From: Saccostrea cucullata
Taxonomy: Eukaryota
Assembly (NCBI RefSeq): GCF_032062105.1
Contig: NW_026935811.1
Span: 1 to 64,000 of the forward strand
Direction of reading: 5' to 3'
Length of the DNA stretch: 64,000 bases
Below the pieces are notes generated by a model that saw nothing but the letters and a program-made list of their open reading frames with translations, was not told the origin of the DNA and searched no databases. The position numbers were made by a program, and so were the translations under genes. Shown here one piece after another: positions 4,057 to 60,720 of the stretch (the stretch's first letter is position 1; the number at the start of each line of letters is the position of its first letter).

Positions 4057-7000
4057 TGCGTGTTTGTGAGCCTGGTACATTTGGATGGCATTGTAAGTTT
4101 GACTGTCGTTGTGCGGAGGGCAGCTGTGACCCAGTCACTGGGGCCTGTCCCTCAGGATGTAAACAGAACCGCTACGGCCCCGGATGTCAGCTCTGTAAGT
4201 AAAAGACAATAGTGGTCCCAGTGCAAAAACAGTCATGAAAAAAAGTACCATCCACCCCCCTTTCCCCATTAAAAATAAATAGATATTCCATTGGAAATTG
4301 TTAGCATATTGAACATTCAAAATCATAGTTGCTTAGCATGTATAGGCATGTGGTGTATTTTTTATGATAATAAGAAAAAGAATTTCAAGATGTCATAGAT
4401 ATGATACACATTGGAAGTGAATACAGATATTATTTTTTGTTTTTATAACAGTTACAACCAATGTAAATCTGAAAGTTGCTGTTCTCATGTAATTTTGCGA
4501 GTAACTAAAAATAAAAACAAAATTTTGAACTTAAGTATCTTAAGTATTTCAGCAGAAAGTTGAAACATTTATTCTAAATTGGTAGGTTTTGAATTTGAGA
4601 CAAAAATAAGGGAAATTGAAATATATATTTCATTTGATACCTGATTTGGTTTTGCCAGTATCGGTGTTCCGTTACTCGTCGGAGGCTCATGGATATCAGG
4701 GGAACACAGACAGAACTGGTGATGGAGAGAAATGTGTTCCATGGAACAACACCATATTTATCAAAATGTATGGATTGAAATCATCAGATTTTCCCGATCA
4801 GGCAATCCCTGGTGCCGTTTGTCGAAATCCACTGAACTTCAAAATAAGAAGTGAGGCATTGGAAGGCAAAGGACCATGGTGCTTCACCAACTTCATGGAA
4901 AAAAATGAATATTTCGGGTCATGTAATATTCCATTAAGAGGTAAGTTTAGGCTAGGGAGTCATGTAATATTCCAATGGGAGGTTTTAATAGGCATATGAT
5001 ATTTTACTTTAAAGACAAAAACCATTTGATTGTCTTACATGCAATTCCATGAGATTAACCAAAGTTTATTTGCCATATGAAATTTTTAACCATATGATAT
5101 TCTTCTTATACATACAGTGCATATAATGAAGATAATGTATAAGTCACTCAGATTGCAGAAATAGGTTAAATCATTGTAATAATTGTTAAAAGTTTACTTC
5201 AGGAGCGGAGCTTCAGGGAGATGTTTACTGGTATGTATGTAATGTCTTGTTGTAGGTTGTGATTCTGGAAGGTTTGGTGAGATGTGCGAGTTTGAGTGTC
5301 ATTGTAAGAATGAGGACTCGTGTACTCGTCTAGGGACATGTCCATTGGGATGTCATCCTGGTTGGCTCAATACAACCTGTCAAACACGTAAGTGACACTG
5401 ACTCAATACAATCCGTCAAACACATAAGTCTCACTGATTCAATGCAATCTGTCAAACACATAAGTCACACTGATTCAATATAACCTGTCAAACATATATG
5501 TCACACACACTCAATACAATCTGTCAAACACGTAAATCACACTGATTTAATACAACCTGTCAAACACGTAAGTCACACAGACTCAATACCACTTGTCAAA
5601 CACACAAGTCTCACTGATTAAATGCAATCTGTCAAACATGTAAGTCATACTGATTCAATATATATAACCTGTCAAACATGTATGTCACACACACTCAATG
5701 CAGTCTGTCAAACACGAAAGTCAGACAGACTCAATACAACCTGTCAAATACCCAAGTCACACTAAATCAACACAACCTGTCAAACACGCAAGTCACACTT
5801 ATTCAATACAACCTGTCAAACATGTAAGTCACACTGACTCAATACAACCTGTCAAACAAGTAAGTCACACTGACTCAATAATACCTGTCAAACTGAAGTC
5901 ACACTGACTCGATACAACCTGTCAAACATGTAAGTAACACTGACTCAATACAACCTGTCAAACATGTAAGTCACACTGACTCAATACAACCTGTCAAACA
6001 TGTAAGTCACACTGACTCAATACAACCTGTCAAATACGCAAGTCACACTGATTCAATACAACCTGTGAAACAGGTAAGTCACAAAGTCCTGGTATTTGCA
6101 AATGTCTTCCGTATTGACACCCCAAAATTCAGTTTTATCAGTGCTGAAAATTTTTTTCTATAAAGATCAATGTTATACATGATAATAATGTACAGTAATT
6201 CAAATTTCTTGTTCTCAAATGCATGTTAAAGATGTTCATCAATTTATATTTGTAACATGTTTGTCATTTATGTACATCTTGTAACACAACAGCTTGTGAG
6301 CCCGGTAACTTTGGAGATGGTTGTGTGTCCAGGTGTGGAAACTGTAAATCGGGACCGTGTGATTTTGAGTCGGGGGAATGTGATGGAGGGTGTTCAGCAG
6401 GCTGGAAAGGGAAACTGTGTAAAACTGGTAAGTGGGGGGTTTAATGAGGTACAGAGAGGGGGAAACTGTGTAAAACTGGTAAGTGGGGGATTTAATGAGG
6501 TACAGGGAAGGGGATACTGTGTAAAACTGGTAAGTGAGGGATGTAATGAGGTATAGAGAAGGGGAAACTGTGTAAAACTGGTAAGTGGGGGATTTAATGA
6601 GGTACAGAGAGGGGGAAACTATGTAAAACTGGTAAGATTAAATAAGGTACAGAGAAGGGGAAACTGTGTAAAACTGGTAAGTGGGGGATTTAATGAGGTA
6701 CAGAGAGGGGGAAACTATGTAAAACTGGTAAGATTAAATGAGGTACAGAGAAGGGGAAACTGTGTAAAACTGGTAAGTGGGGGATTTAATGAGGTACAGG
6801 GAAGGGGAAACTGTAAAACTGGTAAGTGAGGGATGTAATGAGGTATAGAGAAGGGGAAACTGTGTAAAACTGGTAAGTGGGGGATTTAATGAGGTAAAGA
6901 GAAGGGGAAACTGTGTAAAACTGGTAAGTTGGGGATTTAATGAGGTACAGAGAAGGGGAAACTGTATAAAACTGGTTAGTGAGAGATTTAATGAGGTACA

Positions 7001-10000
7001 GAGAAGGGGAAACTGTATAAAACTGGTTAGTGGGAGAATTAATGAGGTACAGAGAAGGGGAAACTGTGTAAAACGGGTTAGTGGGAGATTTAATGAGGTA
7101 CAGAGAAGGGGAAACTGTTTAAAACGGGTTAGTGGGAGATTTAATGAGGTACAGAGAAGGGGAAACTGTGTAAAACGGGTTAGTGGGAGATTTAATGAGT
7201 TACAGAGAAGGGGAAACTGTGTAAAACGGGTTAGTGGGAGATTTAATGAGGTACAGGGAATGGAAACTGTGTAAAACTGGTAAGTGGGGATTTAATGAGG
7301 TACAGGGAAGGGAAACTGTGTAAAAATGGTAAGTGGGGGATTTAATGAGGTACAGAAAAGGAGAAACTATGTAAAACTGGTAAGTGGGGGATTTAATGAG
7401 GTACAGAGAAGGGGAAACTGTATAAAACTGGTAAGTGGGGGATCTAATGAGGTACAGGTAAGGGGAACAAATGCAGATCTAATGAGAAATTGTTTGTGGG
7501 TTTGTTGTTTATGTACAGTTTATTATGTAGGCTGTGCTGATGGAGGGTTTGTGTGAATTGTCTTTGTTTTATGTACGGTTTGTTTTGTAGGCTGTTCTGA
7601 TGGGGAGTATGGGGAGGATTGTTTGGAGACTTGTGGGGCGTGTCGCAGACCTCCATGTGACATCCGTACTGGTCAGTGTGCAGGGGGATGTCAGGACGGG
7701 TACACAGGAATTCTCTGTAAAACAGGTCAGTATAATATTATACTGTTATTGTCACATCACAATGGGGTTTTTTTTTATGAAAGATAAATCCTATATTTAA
7801 CATGACATTTACAACAGAATGTGAAGCTGGATATTTTGGGACCAACTGTAGTAGGACATGTGGCCATTGTTTGACAGGAAGCTGCCATTTTGTGACAGGG
7901 GTGTGTTCAGCTGGATGTAAGCCGGGGTGGCAGGGGATCCAATGTCTGGAAGGTAAGGATCCAGTTGTTTTGATGGTGTTTGGGGTAGGATTCAGTGTCT
8001 CATTAGACAGCAGAGCAATTCTTAGATTTTATTTTTCAATTTAATTCAAATAATTACATATCAGTATTCATTGAATTTCTCTTAATTTTGTCTGTCTTAA
8101 TTCCATTGTCTGTCTTAATTCCATTAAAAGCCAAATAGATTTTTTTTGTAATCAAAGCTTAAGTAATTTACTTCATTAATTTATAACCCTTAAGGCTTGA
8201 ATTTAAATTTTTTCTTACATTTATAATTGAAATTTTTGCCGTTTCACTTCCTGAACCTCTAGAAGACCATATTCCATTAAGATGTGACTATTTCAATTTG
8301 TTTATTTGGCAGCGTGTGATGATTTCAAGTTTGGTGAGAACTGCTCCAATAATTGTGGGTCGTGTCTCGGTATGACCCCCTGTGATAAGGAGACCGGGCT
8401 TTGTACTGGGGGGTGTGAGGACGGATTTACTGGGGACCTGTGTATGGGTGAGTAGCTTTGGTGTAAAAATAAAGCATTAAAAGAATTATGAACTGTATAA
8501 AATTCTAACTTAACCGACATTACCTCAGTGTTTGATTGATATACAATCATGACAGACTAAGATAATGAATTTACCAATCCTATCTGAATTTGAAGATTTG
8601 GTTCCAGTGGAGTTATCAGACAATACATCGACGGGGAGTGTTATTGGAGGCATTGTGGCAGTACTGGTTATTATAGCCATCATTGTAATTGTCGTCATTG
8701 TCATCAGGTAGGTTTTATCCTTTGAAGTTGATGTTAAATACATTGGCAAGATGAATTACCTTTGACGATTTTACAAATCTTGTAGGGAATATTACTTCCT
8801 TCACTAGGAATTTCACTTGAGGATACTAGTATAGGGCCTGCTGTTCCCACAAAGTTTCATACTCTTAGGGATTTTATACTATTTTAAAATTTAAAGTTCA
8901 GCAGTTAAGATTTAAAGATTGAAAGAACTATATGCGGTATATTGCATATATTTGCCCCCACAAAAGTCAAATTTTGAAAACTTCCTGAAATGTGCTGAAT
9001 TCAATAAATTGTATGTGAAATATAAATTAACAGAAAATATTTTAGTGTCAAAGCAGTGTATTTACAATTTTTGTTTTATGACGTCACAAACTAGTCTGAT
9101 TTTATATCCTTTTTCAGAAAGAGGACAAAATGGACAAAATTTCAACAATTTTAGCTTCAAAATTTATAGAGCGCAAGTTTTTTTCAGGAACAATATTGAC
9201 ATTTTTAATTGTTATTATCATTCTACACATCATATCAAAATATTGGTCCTGAACACACATGCGCTCGGTGACTTTTACTCAAAATATCGACGAAATATGT
9301 ACATTTTTCTGTAAAATTCATAAAAAACTGAAATTTACGTCATGTTTGTGACGTCATTACGTACATATGGCGTCATTACTTATGAAAATATTCAGTGCAT
9401 TGAAGTCAGCTTATACTTCCCTGCTTAAGAACTTAATTAAATATATTTCCATCGAAGTTTGATTTGGGGGGCAAATACTGGTTATTACCGAATAAAGTTC
9501 TTTACATCGTTTACATACATATACATGTATCTTTCATGGTATTTATAGCATGATTACATTATTTTACAGACGTAGAAAGTTACAGACGCTAACATTTGGT
9601 AAAAAAGGACAGGATGAAGAAAAACGGCCTGTAGAACTGACTCAAAGTAAAGAAACGGATCAGCTAATAGCTAATGGTAGGCAGTAAACCTGTATTACTG
9701 TGAAATCACTAATTTTCATGGGGGGGTAATTTTCATAGTTTTCAAGGTATGAAGAGACCCACGAATTTATATCCACCACTGAAATGCAACTTTTGACATA
9801 CAGTCAAACCTGTTTTAAGAGGCCACTCGTGGGAGAATGACAAATTGGCCACATAAGACAGGTGGCCACTTATTCCAGGTTTCAAACCAATGAATTAAAA
9901 AAATTGCGATCACAGTTGTGTATTTATTTTCACATGTATCCAAATCCAATTTCAACACATTTAAAAACTTGGGAAATTTTAAGTCAAATTAAATCCATTT

Positions 10001-13000
10001 TCTTACATTTTATTTTACATGAATTTCTGTGAGAAATCTGTTATTGTTTTTTTTTTGTGTGTTGGTAATTTAATTTTGCAGCCACAAGAAAATCATGAAA
10101 TGTTCTAACAACTTATTAGCGTTTCCCTGATGCTGTGTAAAGCTTTTTAGTTTTTCTAGATATATATTTATTTATATAACATAAAGACTGTCCGCTATGA
10201 CTTGATAACCTCAGGCGAAATTAATTGTAATTGAGTTCATGAAAATATTCAACAACTTACTTTCGTATATTAAGAGCACCAAAAAACATCTGTTAACAAT
10301 AAATCATTTAATCATATTAATTAAATCATTAAATCCTGACAGAATTCAAATTACACCTGCAATTATTGGTCATTAACTCATTATCAGCTGTTCATGTTTG
10401 GCTTCGTATGAGGATACGAGGTCACGTGTCAGACGGAAGTCATGTGACAAAACGGACAAAATGGCCGCTGAAAACAGGCATGTTGAGCGCATGGGACCTA
10501 AAAACACTGGCCACTGGCCGCGTTAGACAGGTGGCCGCTTAAATGAGTTAAAATATAGTGAAAAATTGAACGTGCGGGATTGAAACTGGCCACTCATGGG
10601 GAGTGCTTTATAAGTTTAGCGGCGTAACATTGTGGGGCTCCTTAATCTGAATGTTGAACGAAAGACAACAGGATATAATTTGTTTTTAATATTTTATTAG
10701 ATTTTATTCAATAAACATACAAAAATACTCTTCTTCAGCTCTGCGGTCCTCACCTGAAATAAAGACAAACCAACCACCCTTTCCAACAAATGTTAATATA
10801 AAAACCACCCTTTAGCAAACCCTTTAACAAATGCAAATAGACCTAATGCCTTTAGGTCTTGAGTTGAATCAAGCTTAAACTAGTGATATCTTCACTTATA
10901 GTGAGTACAAATATAAAATTTTAGGTTATAGCAAACAACTAATTGTATAGGGACAAAAAGTTTATGCTGATATCTCAATACAATGCGTTTAGCATTTGTT
11001 AACATTCAAAGGATGTAGCAAACAACTAATTGTATAGGGACAAAAAGTTATGCTAACATCTCAACAAAACTCAATACAATGCACCATGCATTTGTTAGTT
11101 TGTTGTAAATAATAATGTCAGGAGTTATAAATATCAAGTTCAGGTCACTTCTTGTGCCTTAGTAAATACTACTCAACAATAAACAATAACGAGTCCAGAT
11201 CACTACTTGTGTCTGAATAAGATAAATGAATAAAGCAATCAAATGTTGCTAACAAATTCAGGTTAATAATTACCCATCATGTCAATTTGTTTCTCTGTCT
11301 AAAACAGAACCCTTTGTGATGGGGAGACTGCCTTATTCAGAGTTGGTCCGTCAGGTAGACCTTTCCGTGGGTGAGACCGCAGGCGTCTGACCTTTAGACG
11401 CTGGGAGCTCGTATATAAAGCCTTTACAAGCTTTATGACGTCAACCACTCAAAGCATGAGATTTGGCGCCATAACGTCAAATAGCTGGAAAACTTCGGAC
11501 GCACTTAACTATTATACTTATCCGAGGTGTTCCGAATGCACTTTATAGATTTTGCCACTAAGTTAAAAAGCAGAGTGTAATTATAAGGTTTTACCCTAAT
11601 TATCAATGAATGGATTTATTAATTATACAAATTATCAAAGGTAAGCACATTTAGTACTCTATAAAAGCATTTATAGACCAGTAAATGGTTTATTTACATT
11701 CCGTATTCCTCAAAACATGGAGGAAATTCGGTACATGGTGAACAATTTGCACCCAGATCATAATAAATTCCAAATAACATTAATCAATAATAACAGATAA
11801 ACAAGAATAAATGTCAATTCATATCATTCATTCAATCATTCATCGAATCATTATTTTAATGATTCATATCACAAGAAACATTTTGTTTACTTATTCATAA
11901 CCATAGTGGAGAATGCCAAATTCGTAACATTACTACTAAACAGTTATTCAACCATGAAATAAAATCCCAATGAACTAATAAATTTTCCTCAAACCTCAAA
12001 AATTTGACCCTCGAAAATATGTGATTTCACAGTAATATTGCTCTCTAAATGTAGTCTTCAGGTCTCTCAGCTAGAAAAAAAAGTGACACACTTTATCATT
12101 TGAATAAAGGAGAAACTGAGAGGCCTGCCTATTTATCAGTCAGTTAATTACGTATTAATTTTATTTCCCAGAATCCTCTATGTCTGATCCTCATGATGAC
12201 ACAGATCCCAACCTGAATGAGCCAATATACGCCAACGTTAACACCAAGAAGCAGAGCAGTCCTATCAAAGTGGCCGACTTGTTTGATTACATCCGAGAAA
12301 ACAAGAAAAACGAGTGTGAGGGATTCAAAAAAGAGTTCAATGTAAGACGGAGATTAAAGTTTGATACCTTAAAGAAAATATGTTAAAACTTCAATGTATT
12401 GGAAAAAAAGTAATCCACAAATATTTGGCCTCAAAAATTATGGTTCCACAATATTACATGTACCAAATGTAGACATATTTCTGTTAAGATGAAAAGTCCT
12501 TCCTTTTGGCAACTTTGCCACAAATCTTATAAACAAGCTTTTTGATAAAGGATGTTATAAAGCTATTGACTTTTATTACATCAGGAACTCCCCCATGGGT
12601 TAATGGCACTCTGTGATGAAGCTAAGAAATCCGAAAACAAACCTAAAAATAGATACGGAAACATCACAGCCTGTAAGTAGGAATTATTGTCTATCTATAT
12701 GTGTGTGTTCTAAAATCCTCATGTCATGATAAATTGTTATGTAATCTATTGTGATGTTAAAGATGACCACTCCCGTGTTGTGTTGGATCAACTCCTTAAT
12801 TTCAATGGTATACATGTACATCTATTGTAATGTTACAGACGACCACTCCCGTGTTGTTTTGGATCCACTCCTTAATTGTAATGTAATACATGTAATCTAT
12901 TGTAATGTTACAGATGACCACTCCCGTGTTGTATTGGATCCACTCCTCAATGACCCTAACTCAGATTACATCAATGCCAACTTCATAGATGTAAGTCAAA

Positions 13001-45300: not shown

Positions 45301-45686
45301 TGGGAGTATATGGGTGGTATTCTAACTGAAACTTTTGTGAGGGCTTGTCTCGAGAAGACAGATTATTCTACCTAAGCTCTGCCTCACAAGATCTCATATA
45401 TAGTGAAGTCGCCTTTGGCGACACTATTATTTGGAGTATTTCTCTTTGGACCAGTAAAGTAAAGTTGCTCCTCTATAAATGCTACAAAATATTTTGCTTC
45501 AAATAAATGCTTTGCTGTTTATTTTGATATGCACTGTGACTGACACATGAGTTTGATGGATTTCTGCTTTTGACTTACGGTAAAATACGACAGAAGGCCA
45601 GCAGTCTCGTCCAGAACGAACCATCTATACTGCCATCCTTTCATCACATTTGTCCATTTACTCAGGGGCCCTTCTACGACAGCCAT
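30378..45686 (-). CDS. OSBPL9: Oxysterol-binding protein-related protein 9 (PH, FFAT-like motif, ORD); about 21 exons, three of which look damaged in this assembly
   Basis: N-terminus [26 protein letters not shown]...[52 protein letters not shown] is near-identical to vertebrate ORP9; also [32 protein letters not shown] and the EQVSHHPP fingerprint. Exons: 45686-45579, 43158-43108, 42952-42874, 42753-42677, ~42456-42369, 42150-~42062, 41586-41536, 41307-41208, 40506-40423, ~39389-39263, 38454-38318, 38051-38022, 37698-37536, 37335-37167, 36889-36805, 36474-36300, 32952-32856, 32713-32591, 32232-32141, 31460-31325, 30482-30378 (TAG). Confidence 0.93.
30793..30952. repeat. 160-bp near-perfect palindrome (hairpin element 1)
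   Basis: Arms pair around AAAGCCC-TTC-GGGCTTT. Confidence 0.9.
32252..32400. mobile_element. Short TA-TSD MITE
   Basis: TACTGTGAAATC ... GATTTTACAGTA, same family as the element at 9696-12034. Confidence 0.75.
33361..36109. mobile_element. 2.75-kb non-coding TIR element with 8 internal copies of a 16-bp motif
   Basis: CGGGTGAAACACAATATAGGG / CCCTTTATTGTGTTTCACCCG termini; motif TGTAGTGTCCGTAACC in both orientations. Confidence 0.75.
38474..39160. repeat. About 345-bp intronic tandem duplication (2 copies)
   Basis: ACATGTATTACAAAACAAAGTGTGAGATTC at 38474 and 38819, with high identity through both units. Confidence 0.9.
40663..40911. mobile_element. TA-TSD MITE
   Basis: TACTGTATAAG ... CTTATACAGTA. 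Confidence 0.7.
41746..42029. mobile_element. TA-TSD MITE (about 282-bp insertion)
   Basis: TACCGTAC ... GTACGGTA termini; internal TTAATTTTGGCATTAT / CGCTAAAATT motifs shared with 40663-40911. Confidence 0.65.
43628..44933. mobile_element. TIR element with 6-bp TSD, containing a second 6-bp-TSD element (44182-44622)
   Basis: TAAGCT|CAGGGTTCT...AGAACCCTG|TAAGCT; inner TAATTC|CAGTCTTCG...CGAAGACTG|TAATTC; subterminal ACACAGTAA repeats. Confidence 0.85.
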
Positions 45687-46058: not shown

Positions 46059-49000
46059 ATGGCCCAGCCTGGAAACGGTCGAGAAAACCCTATCACAGGG
46101 CCTTATAGGGCGACCAAACTGGTATTGTTTAGATTTCAATGTTCTTCATGTTTGTTTCTTTATGTGACAGAGGTGGCATGTGTTTTCTGCTTACTGCTTT
46201 GTTTACATTAGCCTATTTGTAAGTCTGCAGAAAGACAGTATGACATGAAGTGTATAATCTCAAATATCACTGTAGAGAGTTGCAATAAAAGTAAACTGAA
46301 AGTATTATTTAACATGTTTGATACTAATTATCATTTTGTCAAAAAAATAAACAGACGTATACAACATAAAAGGCACCCTTTCTAAAATACCAATTTAATT
46401 AAAAGTTGAGATGTGTTTCCTGATGATTATCATAATTATGAAATGTTAAAATTATTTTAGTGGAATGAAGTGATCTGTGCATTTCGACAAGGCGTTCCTG
46501 CAGGTCGACATCGTCGATACATGAAGACTTACGAAAAGTGTTTCACTGCAACAGAAGCTGTAGACTGGTTGCATAATTATCTGAAGTCAAATTGCAACTT
46601 CGCATCAGAGGTGACAAGGTAAAGTTTCTGGTAGCATAGAATCTACTCTCTCAAAACCTACATTGTCTCTGACATTGACAAGAAGAATTTCTGTAATCCA
46701 ATGTGTGCAAGCAAAGTTCTTGAAATTATTTTTCAAGTTTCAGAAACTTGTACTGACACTTCTACTTTTATTTTTGGTCCAATCCAAATTATATACATAT
46801 TAATTCTCAACTGAATTCCACATGTTCAGGTTTCATCTCACTAATTTATTCAAGCATTTAACATATCCTTTGAATATACTTCTTTCATTTGGTCACATTC
46901 TCTTTGTGCCCAATCGTCTCTCCTGAATACCTCTCTATAAACATCTAATTTCCTCCTCCTCTCTCATTCCATCTCTAACCTCCATAAAAAGTCATTATTG
47001 TCTAAGTCTGCTGAATGTTTTTCTTCTTCCCTTTCCTTTGATGTCTCACTGTTGCCCGATAAAAGAAAACTTTTGATATTGTTATTTAGTTTATAGATTA
47101 CTAATCCTGATTTTTCTATCAGGGGCCAGACACTACAGCTTCTTCAGAAACTGCACCGAGCACGTGTCATCGAGGACGTGAGAGGGGTGAAACACAACCA
47201 ACAGGACATCTCTGATAACGGCCGGCTACTCAGGTGAGTTTACACTCAACAGCTGCCTCCACTGACATCAATCCTGTTTTGATTCTTCTCCCCCATAAAT
47301 TATACACATTAACTCAGATTGAATGAATATAAACCCCATCCCACCCCACTGATTCCTTTATCATAAATGATAAAAAAAACAGCTATCAGTTTAAGTTTAA
47401 TGTTTTTAGATGTAAAGTTCCCTCCCCTGCCAAGATCATCAGAACACCCTTAAGGATCAGGAATGACATCATCAACACAACAGCAGCACCCTCTGTAGGA
47501 CCAATCAAATTAGATCTGGACCTCCAGTTAGAGACACGCCCAGATATCCCAGAATGCCATATTGTGGCCAAAGAACTGTCTGCCACTGAAACGGAGAACA
47601 TCTGGAAAAACGTGACGTTAGACAAGTATGTGAAGTAAAAATAATTATCTAATCACTGGAGTCAGTCATTCAGATTGATTTTTTTGTTTCAATATATACA
47701 CATGATACATTGTATTCAATCAAAATAATCCACATGTTTTATGGGATCATCTACTAAAATTGGTCAAATTAATTTCATTGTCTGATTGAGAAATGACAGA
47801 AGGAGATCTACTTAATAATTAGTGTGATGATATATATTTATTTATATAGCTTGAACAATGATATAAGTCTAAGAAAACGCACACGTTACCAGTGAACTGA
47901 TTAGATTGGATAACTAACTGTGTTAAATGTTTGACAGATTACAGCAGGTGCTACACATGGAGAATCTAGAGGACATTCTGGATAGCAGTCTAGTGGTGGG
48001 GAAGAACATCCTCCATAACTGTGTGTACATCAATAAAAGTGGAATAGTCACCAACATTCCTCAGAAAGGTAAACCATCCCATCTATCTAAATTAAGTCCA
48101 TCATCACACTCACCCAACTGTGTACATCAATAAATTAGAATACTCACGAGCCTCCTATCCCCATCCCCCCCCCCCCCCACACACACACACACACCCACAC
48201 ACATATTCTATGTGAATGTTGATGATGAATTACTAAGGGGACTGTTGATCCACAGTTTTTCCATGTATTTCAATAGTATAATTATAAAATCAAACCATTT
48301 TATTTCCTGAGTGATGTTGGAGTAAAATCCTCACATATTTAGGAATTAACAGTAGTGAAGAGTGACAATATTGCATATTATATGTTACCTGAAATTGTAA
48401 GATGTAAGTGTCGTTTTTTTCTTTAATTAAATGTACACTATCTACATTTCTATCTATTACAACAGATCAGCTACCACACTGGGCCCTGTCTGCTATGAAG
48501 TGTCTGGCTCACTGTAAGTTGACTATATATCTGATTTCATTTCATTCATTTAATATACATTTGTCTGTGTACTAGTAGTATTACACAGTCAAGCTATATA
48601 ACAGGCATGGCTGTCTCTGCTGTCAAAGCTTGTGGGAAGGTGCAATTTCCAATTTAACTGAAAAATCTTACCTGGAGAAGAATTGCATGAATAATGCATA
48701 TCAAGATTCATGCTATAAACAGATAAAGTTTCCTCAAGATTCTGCATTTAAACCTTTTTTTTTTTAACATTGAAAAAAATTTATATAAATATGTGATCAG
48801 ATCAAACTATGTCTGAATATTGTAATGTTGCGAGTGTTTGTTGTTATTTTAAGGGCCACAAAAAGTGGACGACCTTCCTAGTTACCCCGGCTTTGAGCGT
48901 GATGTTTTCCGAGTGGTTAAGGAGTACTTCTGTGGCCTTGACGAACCTCTGATGACCTTTGAAATGTATGAGGTCGTCTTAAATGTTTTCAGTGAGTATC

Positions 49001-52000
49001 ACTATTCATTTTTAAATACTCTGATATTCTGTAATCAAGACAAAGTTGCTTTTGAAATAAACATACAGGATTATTTTACATAATTATCTTGCAGAATAAT
49101 GTGTTAATCTGATTGGTTTAGAGCATATCTAGGGCAAAGAGACAATTTTTTTGTCTTCCTCATGTGCAAGGTGACAACTGTGCTTTGTGCCCCTTCAGAT
49201 GACATTGAAATACAGCAAGCAAGCACGGTTACAACTGTGTTGTCTCCCTTTAGAAGAAAATAAATGTGGGAGAAAACATATATCTGCAATTGTTAAAACC
49301 AATTTTTAAAACATTTTTTAATTTCTGTTGTAGTTGTAGCTGATGGCTCGTACCAGCTTCTTCCAGCCACCCCAACATCCCCTGATGCTATGACCTCATT
49401 TGAGTCGGTAGAAAACCTGCTGCTGGATCTTACAAACACCAGATCTGGGTCGTGTAGTGGCCCCCCAGAAATGGACCACACCCCTCTCTGTAGAAAGAGG
49501 AGTGCCCCCTCCCTAGACCTTTCCCCTATCCACCCCATCCCTGACCATGAGAAAGTTACGAACTATGAGACAGCGTTTGGTCCAGATAACAGGACTGTGA
49601 CTCGTGTTTATTACAGAAACGGTGTAGCCATGGACTACAGTAACTGTGAGGAGACGGAAGTGTTTGGTCCTATTGAGACTCACTTTGAAAGTTCCGAGCC
49701 TCTACAAGTGCCAAAGTTCACCGAATGTCAGACGTACGACGTCAACTACGCTCGAATCCGCCCCGTCACTCGGAGAAAAAGTGATAGCAGAAAAACTGGT
49801 GAAAAGAAAAGTGAAGCCTACAGGAGGCGGAGTTATGGCCCCTCATCTGTTGGGTTAGTGTCCTCGCCGAGCTGTGGTGACTGCACGGTCCAGCAGTCAT
49901 CTAGGTCATACAATGGATATATCTCTAGTCGATCTTCTTCTCAAGGAGAGGAAGGCGGAGACAATGTACCAACAAGAACGGGATTCCCCCGATCTAAATC
50001 CAGTATCTCGCTCCACGCCTGTGCTCACCAGGATCTCCAGTCTCAACTGTTGGCAGAGTGCCAGCTACAGAGACAGCAGCAAAAAGTTTTTGAGAGTTGT
50101 GAGTCACTTCCTGGACGAAGTCTGAGTTTATCGGACCTGATGCATGCTGGGACGCTTCTGAAATCAAAATTAAAAAAGTCAAACACAGCCACTGGTAGGT
50201 GATTAAAATTGATTTTCCTGTGCATAATATATAACATTGAAAAAGAAAGAGAAATTTTCAGCTTTTTAAATTGTAGGCAAATGAATGACATCAGAATTAT
50301 GATGATCTTCATACGTGTATCTGTTATGGTTATGTTTTTATTAATGCTTCAGTACCTCAACAAAAAAAGTACTGGACAGTATTTTTTGTCATTATTATTT
50401 GATCACTGCAAAAATAGGTACATGTATTAATTTTGGCACTTCTTTTTAATCCCAAACTTCAAAACCAAATACCAAGCTATAAGCAGTGAATTTTTTGAGA
50501 GTCGATTTGCTATAGATGATGTACATGTATATATTGTACAATGAAGATTGACATTACGATGTTTTCATACAGATCTGTGTGAGGGGGATCGAGAGGAGCG
50601 GATTAAAGACGCCTTACAGTACGTCTGTCTGTTACTGCCCCCTGCCAACAGACGGAAGCTCCACCTACTCCTCAAACTGATGAGTCGGATGTCTGATAAC
50701 CCAAAAATAGAACTAGACGTCTGCCAAACCACTAGGGCTCTGGTAGGTGAAGATTGTACAGCAGTGCGTGGTAATACTATTATTACAGTGAATGTGTTAT
50801 GATATTAATCTTCTGGTCCATTGAAAATTACATGTAATGGCATTTGCAAAAAGTTACTGTAAACCAATTACTGTAAAACAACTTTTATTCGCGACTACTT
50901 TATTACGCGATTTACCACGGATAAACTAGTTCGCGACGATTTATTTTCGCGAACAAGCGTTTTTGGATCTGTTGTTAATAGACACATTCACACTAAGGAC
51001 CGGTTCGCGGCGAGAAATATTCGCGATGACGAGGCTCTCGCGAACTTCGCGAAAATTTCTCGCACGCGAATAAAAGTTGGTTTACAGTATTATACGCGTC
51101 ATTTTTTATTCGCGATTGACCGCTAGAGAACTAATCCGCGACGATTAATATCCACGAACGAGTGGTCACATTTTTTTTATTTCCACGAGTATTTTTGAAT
51201 TAAATTGAAATTTTATATTAGCCCATAAACTAGGTAAAATGGTAGCGTGAGGTCTGCTTACGCATTTTTCAAGACATTCTGTGCAATGCGTCCATTTAAT
51301 ATCTTATATCCGCCCCTAAAGTGGGTAAAATGTCTACCATGAGTATACTCAATATACACATTTTCAAAACGCTCAGATGAAAATCGGGGAAAAAAATATA
51401 GGAGATTAAAATTGATTTAAAACTCTCAATTGTTTAAGTGCCTCATACTAATTGGGTAATCGACGCTTTCCAAGATCTACATAGCCAAGGGGCAATTATT
51501 ATAAATGTTGGGACAGAGCAGGACTGGGCCATAATTAGCCGTAATTAACCAGGCTACCACGGATCTCGACTCGTCTGTAACAATAAATGAACAATAATAA
51601 CACAAGCTGAAATGATTATTGACATTTAAATCATTTTTAGATTTGCCATTCGTTTTTATTTTTTCTGAATGTTTGAAATTAAATCTCAACTGACTTCATG
51701 TACAATAACAGTAGAGTACTTCCGTGATTAATTATTGAACCGTCGGAATCGGTATTGAAAAAAAGGGAAATAACTCTAAATAATACATAATATAAGAATA
51801 TAATGAACAACTGGTTCGCGACGATAAATATCCGCGAGCAGAAGATACTTGCGGATATTTATCGCACGCGTATAATACTTGGTTTACAGTAAATACATGT
51901 ATTCATACAGAATTGACAACGGATGATGAAACTTGATCCATGTGCATCCTTGTATTTTCAAAGCTACTTAATGTACAGTTATTTTTTCTTCATTGTACAT

Positions 52001-53690
52001 TAAGAAATAAATAAGTTGATTAAAAAAAATCTGTTTTATTCCTATCCAGGTATTGGAGACCTTTGCTTCCTGTATACTGAGTTGCCATGACGACTCTGAC
52101 CGTGAGGACTCGCTGGTGATGCAGATTGTATCCTTCCTGTCAGATCACTACAATCACATCCTATCTGTTCCAGAGGATCTGACCACGGTCGTACAGGAAA
52201 GACTCAGCGCCAGCACCAAGACTCAGGTAAATAAAACAAAGACCCAGGTACAGTAAACATATTATAGGGATCACTTTGTCTGTCTGTCTGTCCCTGAGGA
52301 TCTGACCACGGTCGTACAGGAGAGACTCAACGCCAGCACAAAGACCCAGGTACTGTAAAACAAATACCCAAGTCCAGTAAATAAAACAAAGACCCAGAAA
52401 CTTTTCTGCAGGTGATGTCTTTTGTACAGGTGTATCTGTTATTTTCTGCAGGTGATGTATTTTGTACAGGTGTATCTGTTATTTTCTGCAGGTGATGTAT
52501 TTTGTACAGGTGTATCTGTTATTTTCTGCAGGTGATGTATTTTGTACAGGTGTATCTGTTATTTTCTGCAGGTGATGTATTTTGTACAGGTGTATCTTTT
52601 ATTTTCTGCAGGTGATGTATTCCTCTGATACCGTGGGTTTGACCTACTGTCACCAGGTGTCAAAGTCTGAGTACGAGACTCAGCGTCTCAGTAACTCACA
52701 ACGAGCCCTCCGAGATCTCCTGGACGAGATCATCAGCGATAGAACCATGTCCTACAAGGACAAGAAAAAGAGACTCAAAATTGTAAGTCTGTAAATCGGT
52801 CAATTATAGGTCTGTCAATGTAAAAATTAGTAACTCTCTTATGTTGTTGTACAAAAATCATGTAAATAGAGAACTAACATGACTAAAAACTTTTAAGACT
52901 AGAATCAAAGTTGTAAAAGCCATAAACATGATAAAAACATAACAGATTGTAAATCATAAGATGTATGTAAAAATGAGGTTGGAAATATCATGATTTTAAG
53001 AAATATTAACCATGTTGAGGTTCAGCTTAAAAAGCACTCAAAAAATTCAATCTAGTAAACTTAAAAAGACAAAACTTGTATTTTAGACTGTAATATGGAC
53101 TTCCATAATACAAATCCCTTAACACACATGTACCCAAAGAAGAACACGTTTTACAAATATTTTGTCCTTGGTAAAAATTCTATAAAGAATTTAGTGAATC
53201 AGGGAGCAAGGATAATCAGATACTAAGAATATTTACACTGAGAGGGTGTCAGTACTCAAAGCTCATTCAAACTACAGTTGTGTGCCAAAAGTGAAGATAA
53301 TTTTATTTTTTAATGTAATGTACAATGCAGGGATGTTGTTTCCAAAGCGCAGTGTTGAGTTTTAGACACATTGGAACATCTTTTGCTTGATAATTTAAAA
53401 GAACTACAAAAACAATTGAGCAAAGTGTTTATCCAATCTTTCAAATACATAATTGTTAGTTACATCTGTATATTTGTTTGTTTTTTTAGTTCCAGAAAAC
53501 TTACCCTGACATATACGCTGAGAGGTTTCCACCCCACAATTCAAAACCAGCTGTTTCACTGAATCAGAAACCAGGAAACACCAAACCGGTGACATCACAG
53601 GACCCCAAGGCGGCGCTACCACCTAAACCTAAACTCAAACAACCATTACTAGTGAAACCACTGCTTAAACTGAAGGGGCTTAGAATCTGA
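46059..53690 (+). CDS. DEPDC1: DEP domain-containing protein 1 (DEP plus RhoGAP-like); 12 exons, complete
   Basis: GPYRATKL-WNEVI...CFTATEAVDW...; LPHWALSAMKCLAHWP; YPGFERDVFRVV; LLLPPANRRKLHLLLKLM; FQKTYPDIYAERFP. Exons: 46059-46121, 46461-46618, 47123-47233, 47410-47625, 47938-48068, 48466-48513, 48854-48991, 49334-50194, 50573-50742, 52050-52226, 52612-52782, 53490-53690 (TGA). DEPDC1A versus 1B cannot be resolved. Confidence 0.92.
50855..51891. mobile_element. Nested TA-TSD MITEs (inner 50871-51087 sits in the left TIR of the outer)
   Basis: Outer CTGTAAACCAAT[TA]TTATACGCG ... CGCGTATAATACTTGGTTTACAG; inner CTGTAAAACAACTTTTATTCGCG ... CGCGAATAAAAGTTGGTTTACAG. Confidence 0.8.
52402..52620 (+). 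repeat. 40-bp tandem array of splice acceptor plus exon start (6 acceptors)
   Basis: Unit TTTTCTGCAG|GTGATGTATTTTGTACAGGTGTATCTGTTA; the last copy is the real DEPDC1 acceptor at 52611/52612. Confidence 0.95.
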
Positions 53691-54573: not shown

Positions 54574-55151
54574 TTTATGCCCCACTTTGAAGAAGGGAGG
54601 GCATATTGCTTTGCTGCTGTCCGTCGGTCCACTTAGTTTCGTTCATTTTCTTCGCAACCGTTGCACATACTGAGATGAAACTTTGTATACAGATATATCA
54701 CATGAATATCTAGGTCAAGTTTTGTTTTGGGTACGATCCCACCATTTTTGACAGAGTTATGCCCCTTGGACTTAGAAAAATTTCAATTATTTGCAGTTTC
54801 CTTTCATTTTCTTCGCAATGGTTGTACATACTGAAATTAAATTTGGTATACAGAGATATCACATTAGTATCTAGGACAAATTCTGTTTGGGGTAAGAACG
54901 CGCCATTTTTGACAGAGTTATGCCCCTTGGACTTAAGAAAAATTCCAATTATTTGCAGTTTCCCTTCATTTTCTTTGCAACCGTAGCACATACTCAGATG
55001 AAATTTAGTATACAGATTTTTCAGATGAATATCCAAGTCAAGTTCTGTTTTGGGTACAAATGCACCATTTTTGACAGAGTTATGCCCCTTGGACTTTGAA
55101 AAGTTCCAATTTGGGGGAGGGGGGCATAAGTGTTTTACAAACATCTCTTGT
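54574..55151 (+). mobile_element. HINE-type element with three ~162-bp internal repeats
   Basis: TTATGCCCC / GGGGCATAA subterminal IR, short GTCC run, 3' TGTTT-TAC-AAACA hairpin then TCTTGTT. Confidence 0.8.
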
Positions 55152-56490
55152 TTGAATGTGTATTATTTTTTTTTAGAAGTAAAAAAAGATATAACCACTG
55201 TCAGTTATGCCCCCTTTTTCTAATGAGGTCTTATTTCAAATTTTTCAATTTCTAGAATCACTATAATTCTGGTTTTAACAGTTGTCTACAAAGTTTATTT
55301 TTTGTTGGAAGTAAATAAGGGTACATAAAATTTCTCATTGTACATGCTGTATAAATCTAATGTATATAGATACAGCGCCCTAGTAATTTACATGAGGGCC
55401 CCTGTAATATACTAATTTTTAACTCCATATCATCAGATCTACAACTATTGCTATCATTTTATACTGTGTAATATACCTCACTAATGCAGCTTGTGATTGT
55501 AACCTCCATAAAAGTTTAACTTTTGGATATCTTCTGTTTATGACTTTTTGAAAGTATTTTTATTTTCTATATTATTTTTCTTCAGATGTTCTTCCCTCAT
55601 TGTACACATTCTGTGTGTTCAATGCAAATTAATTAAGCTTTTTAACAAGAAATGTTATTTTCAGCATTATCATTATTGCTTAACATTAATTACTCAGTAT
55701 TTGACCTGTTTGCTGTTACTTGTGTCTCGTAATCATGGCTACTAGTCCTAAATAAACTTCTAAGGTGGGACTATTGTTTGAATGACATCAGAAATAAATA
55801 CACCAAAGGTATTCAATTGTCAGTTTTGTGTGTATTTAAAGCAGAATGCCAAAAAAAAAAAAAATTACAAGAAATGTATGTCAAAACACTGTTGCCCCCA
55901 TATGGCAGCTCATGGCAAGAGTTGCATGCATGAAGTTTCTCTTGAGCAAGTCTAACTCCACTAACAAGGTCGAAATGTCAAAATTGTTGGTATTCAAATA
56001 AAGGTTCTGTCATAAGGAATTCACCTGTTAAATATGAATGCCCTACTAGTACTAAATTTTCAAACTAGGCATGTTCGAATACAGGTGGCCAGATATAGCT
56101 CAATGGGCCTTGAAGAACATTTGAAGAATATTTGTGACTTGTTCTAATTATTCCCCATAATTCAGTTTGATTAAAACAATAATGCATATTGCATGGAACA
56201 AAAAATTCATAAAAGCTTTATAAGTGTCTTTTTATGATCAATGGTTATCACCATGTAGAGATGTAATTTATATTGGTGTGCATGATCTCTGTACAGAAAC
56301 ATTTTAATAAAGAAGACAGCATTAATTTAATAAAAATTATTTTTTAAAGAAGTAAAGCAAAAATATTTATTATATGTACCTTCAAATAATTGTAAATAAT
56401 TAAATATTGTTGTTTATAACCATGATAACATCGATCTTCTGCTAAGAATAATATTACGTACGAGCTATCTAATACCGATACGCCGGGAAA

Positions 56491-59400
56491 ATGGCATCGG
56501 TACCACCACTAGGACAAGTAAGTGTATTTTTTGTTGTTTTCTTACAATATTCTTCCATATGTGTTCACTAACTGCTTCGAAATGATGCAAATGTATTTAG
56601 TGTATAAGATAAAACGATTTTGTGGCGCAAGCCAAGACTACACCATCTGGAGACTAGAGAACGCAACTGGCCGTTCTGTGACTTTTCGACATTTTGCATA
56701 GTAAAACCAACACTCTGGTGCATGCTGCATCATTAATGAAGAATAGATATAGCTTTGTATATTTAATATATAAATTAAAAACAAAATTTCTTTATCAGTT
56801 CAAAGTCCTGGTGAAAAGCACAAACTTACAAGTGTGGTGTGTTCTCGATCGGTGTATCATTGCATTGTATGCCAGCTGTTCACTGTAAAGAGATATATTA
56901 CCGTTTTTCTTGTATTCATCAATATTCTTGAGAAAATATATTTACTCCTTAAATCAGAATAAGCGGTACTTCTTTCAATTGATTCTGATTTCGTACATTA
57001 ATATGCTTCATTGTGTAAATATGGTAAAATTGTAGAGCTACCAGTAATTAATTTATATTATCTCAGAATAATGTAGCTGCAGAACTGTAGCTCTCAGAAA
57101 AAAATATTTTGACAGAACGAAGATCTACTACTTGGACCTGTGTTAAAAAAAATGTCGATAAAGTCATCATGATAAATCTGTATGAAAAATACTACAGTGT
57201 TTAGTAGTTTTATTTTTGTGTCAGTGCATCTGTGGGATGTATTTTTTGTTTTGCTCATTTATTCATTTTTTGAAAGGAAACATTGAGCTATTTCAAATGT
57301 ATTACATGTATAAGTGATATATTTGAATTGTTCTTAGATTGCTGGGAGCCACATTGGTGTATACGAAGCTTACTACAAACAGGTAACATTAATGGCTCTC
57401 ACTACACTTACAGTGGGGGGAGTATTTTTTTTCTATAAAATCCTATTTCTATGTTAAAGAATTTTTATATTTACATGATAAATGTATAGTAATAATAGTA
57501 CAAGCAAAGTCATGTTCAAATAAGGATATTGCATCTATTTTTGAAGACATGTATTTATAAATATAAACAAGTACTTCCTTGTGTGATTTTATAATTGTTG
57601 ATGTCTTATTTTAGTCAATGCTTGAAGTATTTTAATTACTATTTCTAGGCTGATCCAAACAACACGGGGAGTATAGGAGCTCTAGATGCTGCCAGCTTCC
57701 TCAAAAAGTCCTCTCTCCCAGACACTGTACTCTCGAAGGTCAGTACGGTAGAACACAAACTGACCACTGGACCAGGTCATGGATCTTGACAAGAACATGT
57801 ACAATAAAGAATTATATGCCTTATCATGTATATAGCATAGGTAGATAACATTTGTCCAGTTTAGTGTTGTTCCACATTTTACTATAATTCAAAGAAACCT
57901 TAAAACAATGTCATCAGATTGGATTATGGTGAGAGCAATTCAACTTTAACAAAAGTCTTTGACCTTGACCTTCCATTCATGCCCATTTTCTAAAAGAAAT
58001 TGCACAAGAACTTTTCATCAAACTTCTTTTTATCTATTTTTATATATGTGTGATTTCTGACCATATTTGACTAATGGTATTTATAGATATGAGATCTCTG
58101 ACCATATCTGTCTGTTTTTAGATATGGGATCTCTGACCATATCTGTCTGTTTTTAGATATGGGATCTCTATGACCATGTCTGACTATTTAAAGATATAGG
58201 ATCTCTGACCGTGTCTAACTATTTTTAGATATGGGATCTCTCTGACCCCTCAGGAAAGGGATACCTGGAAAAGACAGGGTTTTATGTGGCCCTGAAGTTG
58301 GTAGCCCTGGAGCAGAACAAGATAGAGCTCAGCATATCTAAACTGACGGAAATGACGCCAGCACCAAATCTGGTAGGAGAGCATCGGCAAAGTGTTCAGT
58401 ATTACTGAAAGTTCATTAGTGATATTTAAAAAAAATGTTTGTTTAGCAAAACATTTGAACCTGGAACCATACAAAGATTTTGAATAAAAACATTTCAAGA
58501 CAGTTTATTGCATGTATTTTTATTAATTAGTGGGAAAGAGTCATTCCATATAGTTGCTTTAGTAAATGTACCAGTTCTATGCAGGCATTGATTGTTTCCA
58601 AGAGAATTTATTGTATTTTACTAAGACAGGCATTTGCTTAATTTCAATCCTTTTTGTAGTACTTAGCTCAGTTATTTCAGATTACTGGGTAATTCCTATT
58701 TTCTTTGTACAGGGACCAGTGGAGACCCGTACTGAATCTCCCCTGACCACCACCTCTTCCTCCGTGACAGCTCATGTCTCTAACGTGCCGTGGTGCATCA
58801 CTGTGAGTTCTAATGATGCAAAATATAAAAAGTACAGTAATTAACAGTCAATAATAACTAGGCAATTCCCCCTTGTAAATTTATGCATAGATATACTTCA
58901 TGTGTGTTGTTTTTAGGGAAATAAGTAGGGATGCACGATTTTATCGGTATACCGGTATATCACGATTTTTTGTTCCTTGATACGTATCGTGATACGGAGA
59001 CCTATATACTGGTATTTAGGTACATATTATAAAGTCCATAAATTATTTATTTATTTGTACTATCTCTCAAATTACATTTACAGAAAGTCTAAAAATTGTG
59101 GTAAAAGATGAAAAGAAGGGCATCTTACCATCCAAACATAATTAATTATATGTATATTATTGTTTTACAAACAGCGTGACAGTTTGCTGTATAGGGCATG
59201 CTAAAATTTTATAATTATGCTATTTATCATTTTACTCACCGATTGGATGTTTGATTTCAATGGAATCAATAAGACTTTGCATATGAAACATAGAACCCAG
59301 CAATACCACTGACAATACTGACCAATCGTATTGAATGACATGTTTACTAGCAAGCAGGAAACAACAGTTACACCTGGACAGACAAAACAAGTTTTACAAC

Positions 59401-60403
59401 CTCTAATGATTATATTGATAGCTATATAGTACAACAGTAGCAGAGTAGCCTTACTAATTCTGTTTTTTGAATTTTCATATACATAATTATATAAAACCAT
59501 CCGGTCAAATTGTAACAAATATAATACATGCTTTTTTTGAGGACAAAGAACGGGCTTTGACTGACAACGTGTTGCTGGTGAGTACAATTGCAATGTGATT
59601 GGCCAGTATTCTCAGGACATTGTTGTATTCTGAGTTTCATATGCAAATTAGTATTGATTCCATTGAAAAAAAGCATCCAATCGATGAATAAAATGAAAAT
59701 CAGCACACAAAATTTTAGCACGCCCCATAAAGCAAACTGTCACGCTGTTTGTAAAACAATAATAATTTTATATAATGATTATAACTAAGGGAAAAATTGT
59801 CTATCTAGCATATTTTGAGAAAAATAATGAATTTTCATTTAAAATTATGTAAACATTGCTTGAAAAATATTGTGATATTATCGTGATATTCTGGGAAAAA
59901 ATCTTGATATATCAGGATGCGAAATTTTTGGCGATACCCATCCCTAGAAATAATACATAAAACAAGTTGGAATTTATTTTCTTGAATCAAAATTGAATTG
60001 AATTGGAAGAGGACTATCTTAAGTTTTTAGAACTTGTGTCTAGTCCCTTTGACATGATGTCAATAAAATATGTTTAAAAAATTGAATTAACTGTACTCAC
60101 TACTGTGCCAAAATTATATTATAGTTGTTTTGAATGTGTATCCTATCCTAGGATGGTAATTAGCACTTCAAAGGAAAATTATGAATAAGATAAAAGAAAA
60201 AAAATTGCAAAATACTTTGGTACATGTTTGTAGAATATCTTATTAAAACATTTATGTTATAAAGATCTTGCATGTTTTATTTGTTTGATATAATTGTATA
60301 CATGGTTTATTGTTCATAGGATGCTGAAAAGGCCAAGTATGAACCAGTTTATAAAAGCCTGAACCCAGTGAACAATCTACTGTCTGGTGATAAAGTTAAA
60401 CCA
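56491..60403 (+). CDS. EPS15: EPS15/EPS15L1-family EH-domain protein, first 6 exons; 3'-incomplete
   Basis: MASVPPLGQ-IAGSHIGVYEAYYKQ-ADPNNTGSIGALDAASFLKKSSLPDTVLSK-IWDLSDPSGKGYLEKTGFYVALKLVA (EH1), then W...EKAKYEPVYKSLNPVNNLLSGDKVKP (start of EH2). Exons: 56491-56517, 57338-57382, 57649-57738, 58229-58372, 58713-58802, 60320-60403. Confidence 0.9.
58056..58247 (+). repeat. 35-37-bp tandem array of splice acceptor plus exon start (5 acceptors)
   Basis: Unit TTTTTAG|ATATGGGATCTCTGACCATATCTGTCTG; the last copy is the real EPS15 acceptor at 58228/58229. Confidence 0.93.
58926..59946. mobile_element. hAT-type MITE with a nested foldback element (59156-59763)
   Basis: TIR TAGGGATG / CATCCCTA, TSD GAAATAAG / GAAATAAT; inner element has about 180-bp inverted arms starting ATTATTGTTTTACAAACAGCGTGACAGTTTGC. 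Confidence 0.8.
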
Positions 60404-60720
60404 GTAAGTAAAATCAGTAGAACAGCTGAAGTAAAGTTTGAACCAGTTTATAACAGCTTAGTAAAGTATGAACCAGTTTATAAAAGCCTGAACCCAGTGA
60501 ACAATCTACTGTCTGGTGATAAAGTTAAACCAGTAAGTAAAATCAGTTGAACAGCTGAAGTAATGTTTGAACCAGTTTATAACAGCTTAGTAAAGTATGA
60601 ACCAGTTTATAAAAGTCTGAACCCAATGCACAATCTAATGTCATGTGATGAGGTTAGACCAGTAAGTAAAATGCGGGAACCAGTGTTTAACAGCTAAAAT
60701 AAAGTTTGAACCAGTCTATA
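60335..60720 (+). repeat. 129-bp tandem triplication of most of EPS15 exon 6 plus donor
   Basis: Donors CCA|GTAAGT at 60403, 60532 and 60661. Confidence 0.93.

What the first reader, a model, noticed from the sequence alone, without database searches (positions are those of the whole stretch)
4918..60720. Window-wide pattern: tandem duplications anchored on splice junctions in all four genes
Seen in sequence: about 17 of roughly 120 junctions are duplicated into the adjacent intron. Donor-type cases are at 4940, 5387, 6427, 19390, 23225, 36805, 38318, 48068 (partial), 52226 and 60403. Acceptor-type cases are at 7591, 12914, 24012, 31460, 32232, 52612 and 58229. Units are unrelated in sequence (29-129 bp), occur on both strands, and range from degenerate pairs to homogeneous 43-copy arrays, which suggests an ongoing process. 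The four largest non-transposon arrays all straddle an exon/intron boundary. Inference: selection explains why copies extend only into the intron, but not why they start at junctions instead of in the much larger intron interiors. That points to a mutational mechanism tied to splice sites (breaks or slippage at spliceosome pause sites, R-loops, or exon-edge nucleosome/methylation boundaries) and to strong discrimination against many perfect decoy sites. I do not know of a description of this at such density, but cannot search the literature.
Basis: partly seen in the sequence, partly recalled or inferred. Interest (0 to 1): 0.9.

Follow-up and report, generated by a model that had tools for sequence, protein, structure and literature searches.

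The report
Oyster splice-junction minisatellites ("mirages")
In this rock oyster, short stretches that straddle exon-intron borders have been copied, up to 43 times, into the neighbouring intron at one junction in seven; this is a known and apparently harmless repeat type (amphioxus "mirages", the human F7 repeat), but it is unusually dense here and why exon edges are favoured is not yet explained.

Summary
Real, not an artefact, and of a known kind. The window is Saccostrea cucullata and holds PTPR-, OSBPL9-, DEPDC1- and EPS15-like genes. 17 of 117 junctions have a junction-spanning copy in the adjacent intron (shuffle null 0/2320). The rate is 6-fold that of intron interiors and about 10-fold that of intron DNA within 150 nt of exons. 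Copy numbers differ between copies of the gene (54-bp unit: 43 vs 6), and three cases are shared with S. echinata. Oyster orthologues show 12-14%, other molluscs 0-8%, but paralogous PTP genes show 1/104 and 0/64, so it depends on gene or region. Donors outnumber acceptors 24:8. Units are not cut at the splice site, and Ostrea arrays often lie beside junctions without crossing them. An exon-edge bias plus selection and survival therefore fits better than breaks at splice sites. These are "mirages" (PMC3087553; F7, PMC1557585). The genome-wide motif test is supportive but noisy. This scan has noted the same thing on at least seven other pieces of this genome.

The parts
4057..26540 (+). PTPR kappa-like gene (EGF, kringle, TM, two PTP domains), 25 exons in the window; 8 of 48 junctions duplicated
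30400..45685 (-). OSBPL9-like gene; 5 of 36 tested junctions duplicated; middle exons unresolved
46059..53690 (+). DEPDC1-like gene (DEP/RhoGAP; name from recall, supported by a DEP/RhoGAP neighbour of Haliotis OSBPL9); 2 of 22 junctions duplicated; junctions from 48068 to 53490 seen in RNA contigs
56491..60403 (+). EPS15-like gene, first six exons (name from my recall of EH-domain sequence, not tested with a database); 2 of 11 junctions duplicated
4918..4983 (+). Degenerate 41-bp pair at donor 4940; related copies at the same donor in S. echinata
5366..6083 (+). 36-bp x 20 array at donor 5387 (22 exon nt per unit); 6, 8 and 19 copies in other contigs, 42-bp x 22 in S. echinata; stop in frame
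6405..7467 (+). 51-bp x 21 array at donor 6427; 37 and 47 copies in other contigs, 12 in S. echinata; a different 44-bp unit from the same donor in O. edulis, displaced 2 kb; stop in frame
7519..7611 (+). 60-bp pair at acceptor 7591
12739..12951 (+). 75-76-bp x 2.8 array at acceptor 12914; 7.7 copies in contig C12614; single copy in S. echinata
19363..21691 (+). 54-bp x 43 array at donor 19390; 39 intact GTAAGT; in frame and stop-free (18 aa per unit, at the PTP D1 Q-loop); 6 copies in C12614, absent in S. echinata and O. edulis; 6-bp direct repeat at the unit ends
23206..23840 (+). 29-bp x 22 array at donor 23225; at least 33 copies in C12614; absent in S. echinata
23929..24032 (+). 25-nt copy of acceptor 24012, 79 nt upstream
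31401..31610 (-). Two degenerate copies of acceptor 31460 (offsets about 65 and 143)
32218..32428 (-). Degenerate copy of acceptor 32232, 184 nt upstream (weak, score 34)
36730..36856 (-). 73-bp pair at donor 36805 (52 exon nt)
38205..38372 (-). 86-bp pair at donor 38318 (55 exon nt)
42402..42686 (-).
48022..48148 (+). 30-nt exon-only copy near donor 48068; does not span the junction
52161..52381 (+). Donor 52226 copied twice over: short 21-22-bp units and a 123-bp unit with 66 exon nt
52402..52621 (+). 40-bp x 5.5 array at acceptor 52612, 98% matches; five decoy acceptors with the same last ten intron bases as the real one
58034..58247 (+). 35-bp x 5.7 array at acceptor 58229
60335..60672 (+). 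129-bp x 2.6 array at donor 60403; first extra unit in frame and stop-free

Best explanation
These are 'mirage' minisatellites: near-neutral tandem duplications. Step 1 (partly shown): a 20-130 bp segment is duplicated by slippage or repair between short direct repeats. Step 2 (inferred): in some genes or regions, such events are several-fold more frequent in exon-containing and exon-adjacent DNA than in intron DNA; the cause is more likely a property of exon-edge chromatin or repair than a lesion at the splice site. Step 3 (inferred): selection removes events wholly inside exons and keeps those that leave the real site outermost. Downstream decoy donors behind a strong donor are best tolerated (first site wins, as shown for F7), upstream decoy acceptors less so. 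Step 4 (shown): pairs grow and shrink as ordinary VNTRs. Step 5 (partly shown): anchored arrays last longer than interior ones, because the exon copy is conserved and intron interiors are replaced quickly.
For: Junction rate 14.5% vs 2.4% interior and about 1% within 150 nt of exons (the near-edge denominator is somewhat overcounted, so about 10-fold rather than 15). Junction position in the unit is compatible with uniform. Near-edge arrays that do not span a junction are in excess in O. edulis. Direct repeats flank the 54- and 51-bp units, and the unduplicated S. echinata site has an imperfect version 54 nt apart. Donor:acceptor 24:8, p 0.007; GTAAGT in 12/21 duplicated vs 23/87 other donors, p 0.01. 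Copy-number differences. Intron alignability between two copies falls from 0.96 (1-50 nt) to 0.0 (>400 nt). Gene dependence: 17/117 vs 1/104, p 1e-4; the orthologue of a clean gene is also clean in O. edulis, 0/64. Literature.
Against: No direct evidence of mutation rate; only standing arrays were seen. Microhomology was examined in two or three arrays only. Outside Saccostrea the excess over near-edge intron is only about 2.5-fold, close to what slower decay of an exon-anchored copy could give. All high-rate genes come from one syntenic locus. The genome-wide motif test is mixed: GGTAAGT triples 2260 vs 204 for the reversed control, but GGTGAGT 969 vs 1442.
Confidence: 0.55

Rival explanations
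1. Survival and selection only: duplications arise evenly, but those anchored on an exon last longer and stay recognisable, while interior ones are deleted or overwritten by transposons.
For: Intron interiors do not align beyond about 150-400 nt from exons. Three arrays are shared with S. echinata and one junction with O. edulis. Excess is only about 2.5-fold in Ostrea and other molluscs.
Against: In Saccostrea the old, alignable intron zone within 150 nt has about 1% positives against 12-14.5% at junctions; a fixed exon copy should halve divergence, not give tenfold. Young, near-perfect arrays absent from the sister species (54-bp, 29-bp, 68-bp) are also at junctions. It does not explain clean genes.
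Confidence: 0.25
2. Splice-site-tied mutagenesis: U1 or spliceosome pausing or R-loops in the germ line cause breaks or slippage at the junction.
For: Donor bias and over-representation of the strong GTAAGT donor; in the Saccostrea window spanning events far outnumber near-edge ones.
Against: Unit boundaries do not coincide with the junction. O. edulis and Haliotis have many near-edge arrays that miss it. Donor bias is also predicted by selection.
Confidence: 0.12
3. Functional or selected elements: arrays tune splicing or supply alternative in-frame donors.
For: The 54-bp and 129-bp units are in frame and stop-free. An intronic VNTR affects ABCA7 splicing in humans (PMC5954066, title and abstract start only).
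Against: Presence, unit and copy number are not conserved between copies or species. Unit lengths are of all three frames (11, 4 and 8 for mod 0, 1, 2). The 36- and 51-bp units carry stops. Amphioxus mirages do not alter mRNA.
Confidence: 0.05
4. Assembly artefact.
For: The assembly is fragmented (23,869 contigs) and holds several near-identical copies of this gene. Raw long reads were not available.
Against: Units are diverged (80-98% matches), differ in number between contigs, and recur in independent assemblies of five other molluscs.
Confidence: 0.01

Closest known systems
Amphioxus 'mirages' (Adh3, globins, TnC, PGBD5; PMC3087553, PMC3902484; original Canestro et al. 2002 not held, known here only through those papers)
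   Same: Tandem copies of an exon-intron boundary, at 5' or 3' sites, units of tens to about 160 bp, many with intact GT/AG, length differences between haplotypes, mechanism stated as unclear.
   Different: Described there gene by gene. Here in a bivalve, with a measured rate (14.5% of junctions), controls, a 3:1 donor bias and a strong gene or region dependence. Somatic instability and splicing silence, reported for amphioxus, were not shown here.
Human F7 intron 7 37-bp VNTR (PMC1557585)
   Same: First unit spans the exon-intron boundary; identical downstream pseudo-donors follow the real donor.
   Different: A single locus with experimental proof that the most upstream site wins. Not tested in oyster; says nothing on acceptor arrays or on origin.
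Minisatellite birth between short direct repeats (Haber and Louis 1998; from memory, not retrieved)
   Same: Short direct repeats flank the 54- and 51-bp units.
   Different: That model predicts no preference for exon edges.
Transposon-internal satellites of oysters (166-bp and 128-162-bp arrays in this window)
   Same: Tandem arrays inside introns.
   Different: One unit found at many loci, no exon sequence, no tie to junctions; masked or counted apart in the controls.

Membership tests
mirage minisatellite | Repeat unit spans a real exon-intron boundary | tested here: met
   17 junctions, exon models from orthologous proteins; DEPDC1 junctions in RNA contigs
mirage minisatellite | Extra copies lie in the adjacent intron; the real site is the outermost copy | tested here: met
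   TRF extents against exons
mirage minisatellite | Both donor and acceptor boundaries can be copied; units are locus-specific | tested here: met
   10 donor and 7 acceptor cases with unrelated units
mirage minisatellite | Copy-number differences between haplotypes | tested here: met
   20 vs 6, 21 vs 47, 43 vs 6, 22 vs >=33, 2.8 vs 7.7, 0 vs 6.6; the other contigs are 95% identical in exons, so they may be paralogues rather than alleles
mirage minisatellite | Decoy sites do not disturb normal splicing | tested here: inconclusive
   RNA contigs of a related organism show the normal joints at 52226-52612; one extra joint from 52346 fits either decoy use or an allele that matches the copy better; only contigs, only the top 15 of 99 joints shown
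mirage minisatellite | Somatic length instability (reported for Adh3) | not testable with these tools
   No raw long reads of one animal
transposon-derived satellite | Same unit dispersed over many loci inside a mobile element | tested here: not met
   Units derive from the host exon; among the fetched loci they recur only at copies or orthologues of the same junction; no genome-wide search per unit was run

The most novel reading that the evidence does not exclude
Oysters have a mutational hotspot for 20-130 bp tandem duplication at exon edges of a subset of genes, possibly those methylated and transcribed in the germ line. That would seed hundreds to thousands of independent minisatellites with perfect decoy splice sites, giving a natural genome-wide test of minisatellite birth and of first-site-wins splicing. 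The methylation link is a lead only: genes with intron CpG o/e >= 0.70 had 0/122 duplicated junctions and those <= 0.63 had 33/275, but all but one of the 33 come from one syntenic locus (1/46 vs 0/122 without it).
Probability: 0.3. Interest if true: 0.7.

Novelty: new member of a known kind. Interest (0 to 1): 0.4.

Why it matters
The structure is known, but its cause is called unclear in the literature and it had been described gene by gene. A genome with many independent, polymorphic cases lets one ask whether exon edges mutate more, and how dozens of perfect decoy sites are ignored, for example 39 in-frame donors at a phosphatase Q-loop that nonsense-mediated decay could not clean up. It also matters in practice: such arrays mislead gene prediction and spliced alignment (my aligner was misled once), and they are ready-made length markers.

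Tried and rejected
Genome-wide acceptor motif test: no excess (TTTGCAG triples 172 vs 129, many from one dispersed repeat; TTTTCAG 495 vs 1367); uninformative. Second donor motif GGTGAGT did not exceed its control (969 vs 1442) and the near-miss GGTAACT gave 828 vs 511, so the 15-fold figure from GGTAAGT alone is not robust; counts are weighted by copy number. An ungapped detector missed degenerate pairs and was replaced. Junction centred in the unit: rejected. GC of the intron flank as driver: not supported. Frame selection on unit length: not evident. Four look-ups of orthologous loci (C. virginica, S. echinata and O. edulis paralogue isoforms, amphioxus OSBPL9) found nothing. The original mirage paper is not held.
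Full report
Source and genes. The window is the first 64 kb of contig C17948 of a 1.17-Gb, 23,869-contig assembly. An exon searched by reference is 100% identical to a Saccostrea cucullata receptor phosphatase. Four genes are present: a PTPR kappa-like gene (+, 4057-26540), OSBPL9-like (-, 45685-30400), DEPDC1-like (+, 46059-53690) and the start of an EPS15-like gene (+, from 56491). I wrote a spliced protein-to-DNA aligner; it reproduced my hand-made PTPR exon list, added one exon (18176-18295) and aligned six annotated orthologues at 100% identity. RNA contigs of a related organism show the DEPDC1 joints from 48068 to 53490.

Observation. For each junction I aligned 80 exon plus 12 intron bases to the next 400 bases of the adjacent intron and required the match to cross the junction. 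17 of 117 junctions score 30 or more; shuffled introns give 0 of 2320. The four big arrays are at donors. With the same detector, intron-interior points are positive at 2.4% (ratio 6.0, p 4e-9). Counting non-transposon TRF arrays on collapsed sequence, 9 of 11 span a junction against 1.9 expected. The transposon mask came only from my own small sample of loci and is incomplete.

Ongoing and real. Other contigs of this assembly carry the PTPR gene at about 95% exon identity; whether they are alleles or paralogues is open. They have the same units at other copy numbers: 36-bp 20 vs 6, 51-bp 21 vs 47 or 37, 54-bp 43 vs 6, 29-bp 22 vs at least 33, 75-bp 2.8 vs 7.7, and a 68-bp x 6.6 donor array that the window lacks. 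S. echinata shares three donor cases and lacks the 54-, 29- and 75-bp ones. O. edulis has a different unit from the donor orthologous to 6427, now about 2 kb from the exon with other repeats in between.

How general. PTPR orthologues: S. echinata 6/50, O. edulis 7/50, Pinctada 3/38, Ylistrum 2/50, Mytilus 0/50, Haliotis 3/46. Seven paralogous PTP loci of this genome give 1/104, and the O. edulis orthologue of one clean gene gives 0/64. The pattern is therefore a property of some genes or regions. Genome-wide, three GGTAAGT spaced 20-50 apart occur 2260 times against 204 for the reversed word, which is itself commoner singly (117,497 vs 159,714). The first 100 rows hold about 22 loci with about 20 unrelated units, which extrapolates to several hundred loci. 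This is the highest count of ten words tested, but GGTGAGT did not beat its control (969 vs 1442) and acceptor words showed no excess. I read this as support for a widespread donor-type class, not as a measured fold.

Mechanism. (a) The 54-bp array begins and ends with the same 6 bases and the 51-bp array with about 8; the unduplicated S. echinata site has an imperfect match 54 nt apart. This fits birth by slippage between short direct repeats (model from memory). (b) The junction lies anywhere inside the unit (mean 0.50, sd 0.215; compatible with uniform), so unit ends are not set by the splice site. (c) O. edulis has 9 arrays within 50 nt of an exon that do not cross it, against 2.7 expected; Haliotis shows several too. 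The favoured zone is the exon edge. (d) Intron interiors are young: alignability between the window and contig C12614 is 0.96, 0.81, 0.19 and 0.0 at 1-50, 51-150, 151-400 and over 400 nt from an exon. Yet against the old zone within 150 nt the junction rate is still about 10-fold higher in both Saccostrea species (15.0 and 10.1 nominal, denominators somewhat overcounted), and about 2.5-fold in Ostrea and other molluscs. (e) Donors outnumber acceptors 24:8 in oysters (p 0.007) and GTAAGT is over-represented among duplicated donors (12/21 vs 23/87, p 0.01); shared ancestral events make these counts not fully independent. This is what selection predicts if the most upstream donor wins, as shown for human F7 (PMC1557585); U1-linked mutagenesis could give the same. 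(f) Genes with high CpG o/e had no cases (0/122 vs 33/275). Oyster methylation is mostly intragenic and goes with high, even expression (PMC3840415). The comparison is confounded with locus and is a lead only.

Consequences for splicing. Use of the next copy would add a stop (36, 51, 123 bp), shift the frame (29, 40, 35 bp) or insert stop-free peptide (54 bp: 18 aa at the D1 Q-loop, 39 intact GTAAGT; 129 bp: 43 aa). The one read look-up gave contigs of a related organism: normal joints are present; a joint from 52346 to the real acceptor has only 37 letters on its short side and may be an allele that fits the copy better than the window's exon; no decoy acceptor joint is among the 15 of 99 shown. 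Silence of decoys is therefore not shown here.

What is known. [quoted passage not shown] I got the term from earlier notes of this scan and checked it in those papers. All structural features of the class that I could test are met. My searches found no paper that quantifies it in molluscs, though the library is incomplete. The scan has noted the same pattern on at least seven other pieces of this genome.

Verdict. Observation confirmed; interpretation partly supported; new member of a known kind, at high local density, with an unexplained exon-edge bias of about 6-10-fold in Saccostrea. Interest 0.4.

Noticed in passing
window:41700-42760 (- strand): The middle exons of OSBPL9 look like a mosaic of local copies: the exon reading [10 protein letters not shown] is preceded by copies of the previous donor, and the next exon ([11 protein letters not shown]) runs into a copy of that exon's end and a stop. 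Possibly a broken allele or an assembly error; no second copy in the assembly.
   Followed up: partly
window:36620-36660 (- strand); L001 OSBPL9 3' part: A second, older degenerate copy of donor 36805 appears to match the unit of a roughly 44-bp array at the orthologous donor in S. echinata (by eye), so this donor may have been duplicated twice.
   Followed up: partly
window:52161-52226 vs 52283-52349: Of four differences in the last 37 nt between the DEPDC1 exon end and its intronic copy, three are synonymous third positions, which suggests the copy keeps an older or another allele's state.
   Followed up: partly
window:38466-39159: A 345-bp AT-rich tandem pair fills most of an OSBPL9 intron and ends about 12-24 nt from an acceptor without crossing it.
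   Followed up: no
G000:C12409:316826-318784 and 413932-414714: Intronless PTP reading frames (876 and 991 aa open), unlike the intron-rich family members; possible retrocopies.
   Followed up: no
G000 contigs C12614, C17671, C21282, C10242, C8487, C15713: At least seven whole or partial copies of this PTPR gene in one assembly; four are nearly identical to each other, which suggests redundant contigs or a recent local expansion.
   Followed up: partly
window:14970-15849, 54635-55111, 61614-62750: Arrays of 166, 162 and 128-146 bp that look like transposon-internal oyster satellites; similar units recur in other fetched loci. Counted apart from the finding.
   Followed up: no
L029 and L031 (Haliotis rufescens): Abalone orthologues are packed with long minisatellites (up to 173 copies), many starting within 130 nt of an exon; PTPR, OSBPL9 and a DEP/RhoGAP gene are syntenic there as in the window.
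   Followed up: partly
window:48991-49340: An RNA contig joins 48991 to about 49337, a few bases upstream of the modelled acceptor 49340: a probable tandem acceptor or species difference.
   Followed up: no
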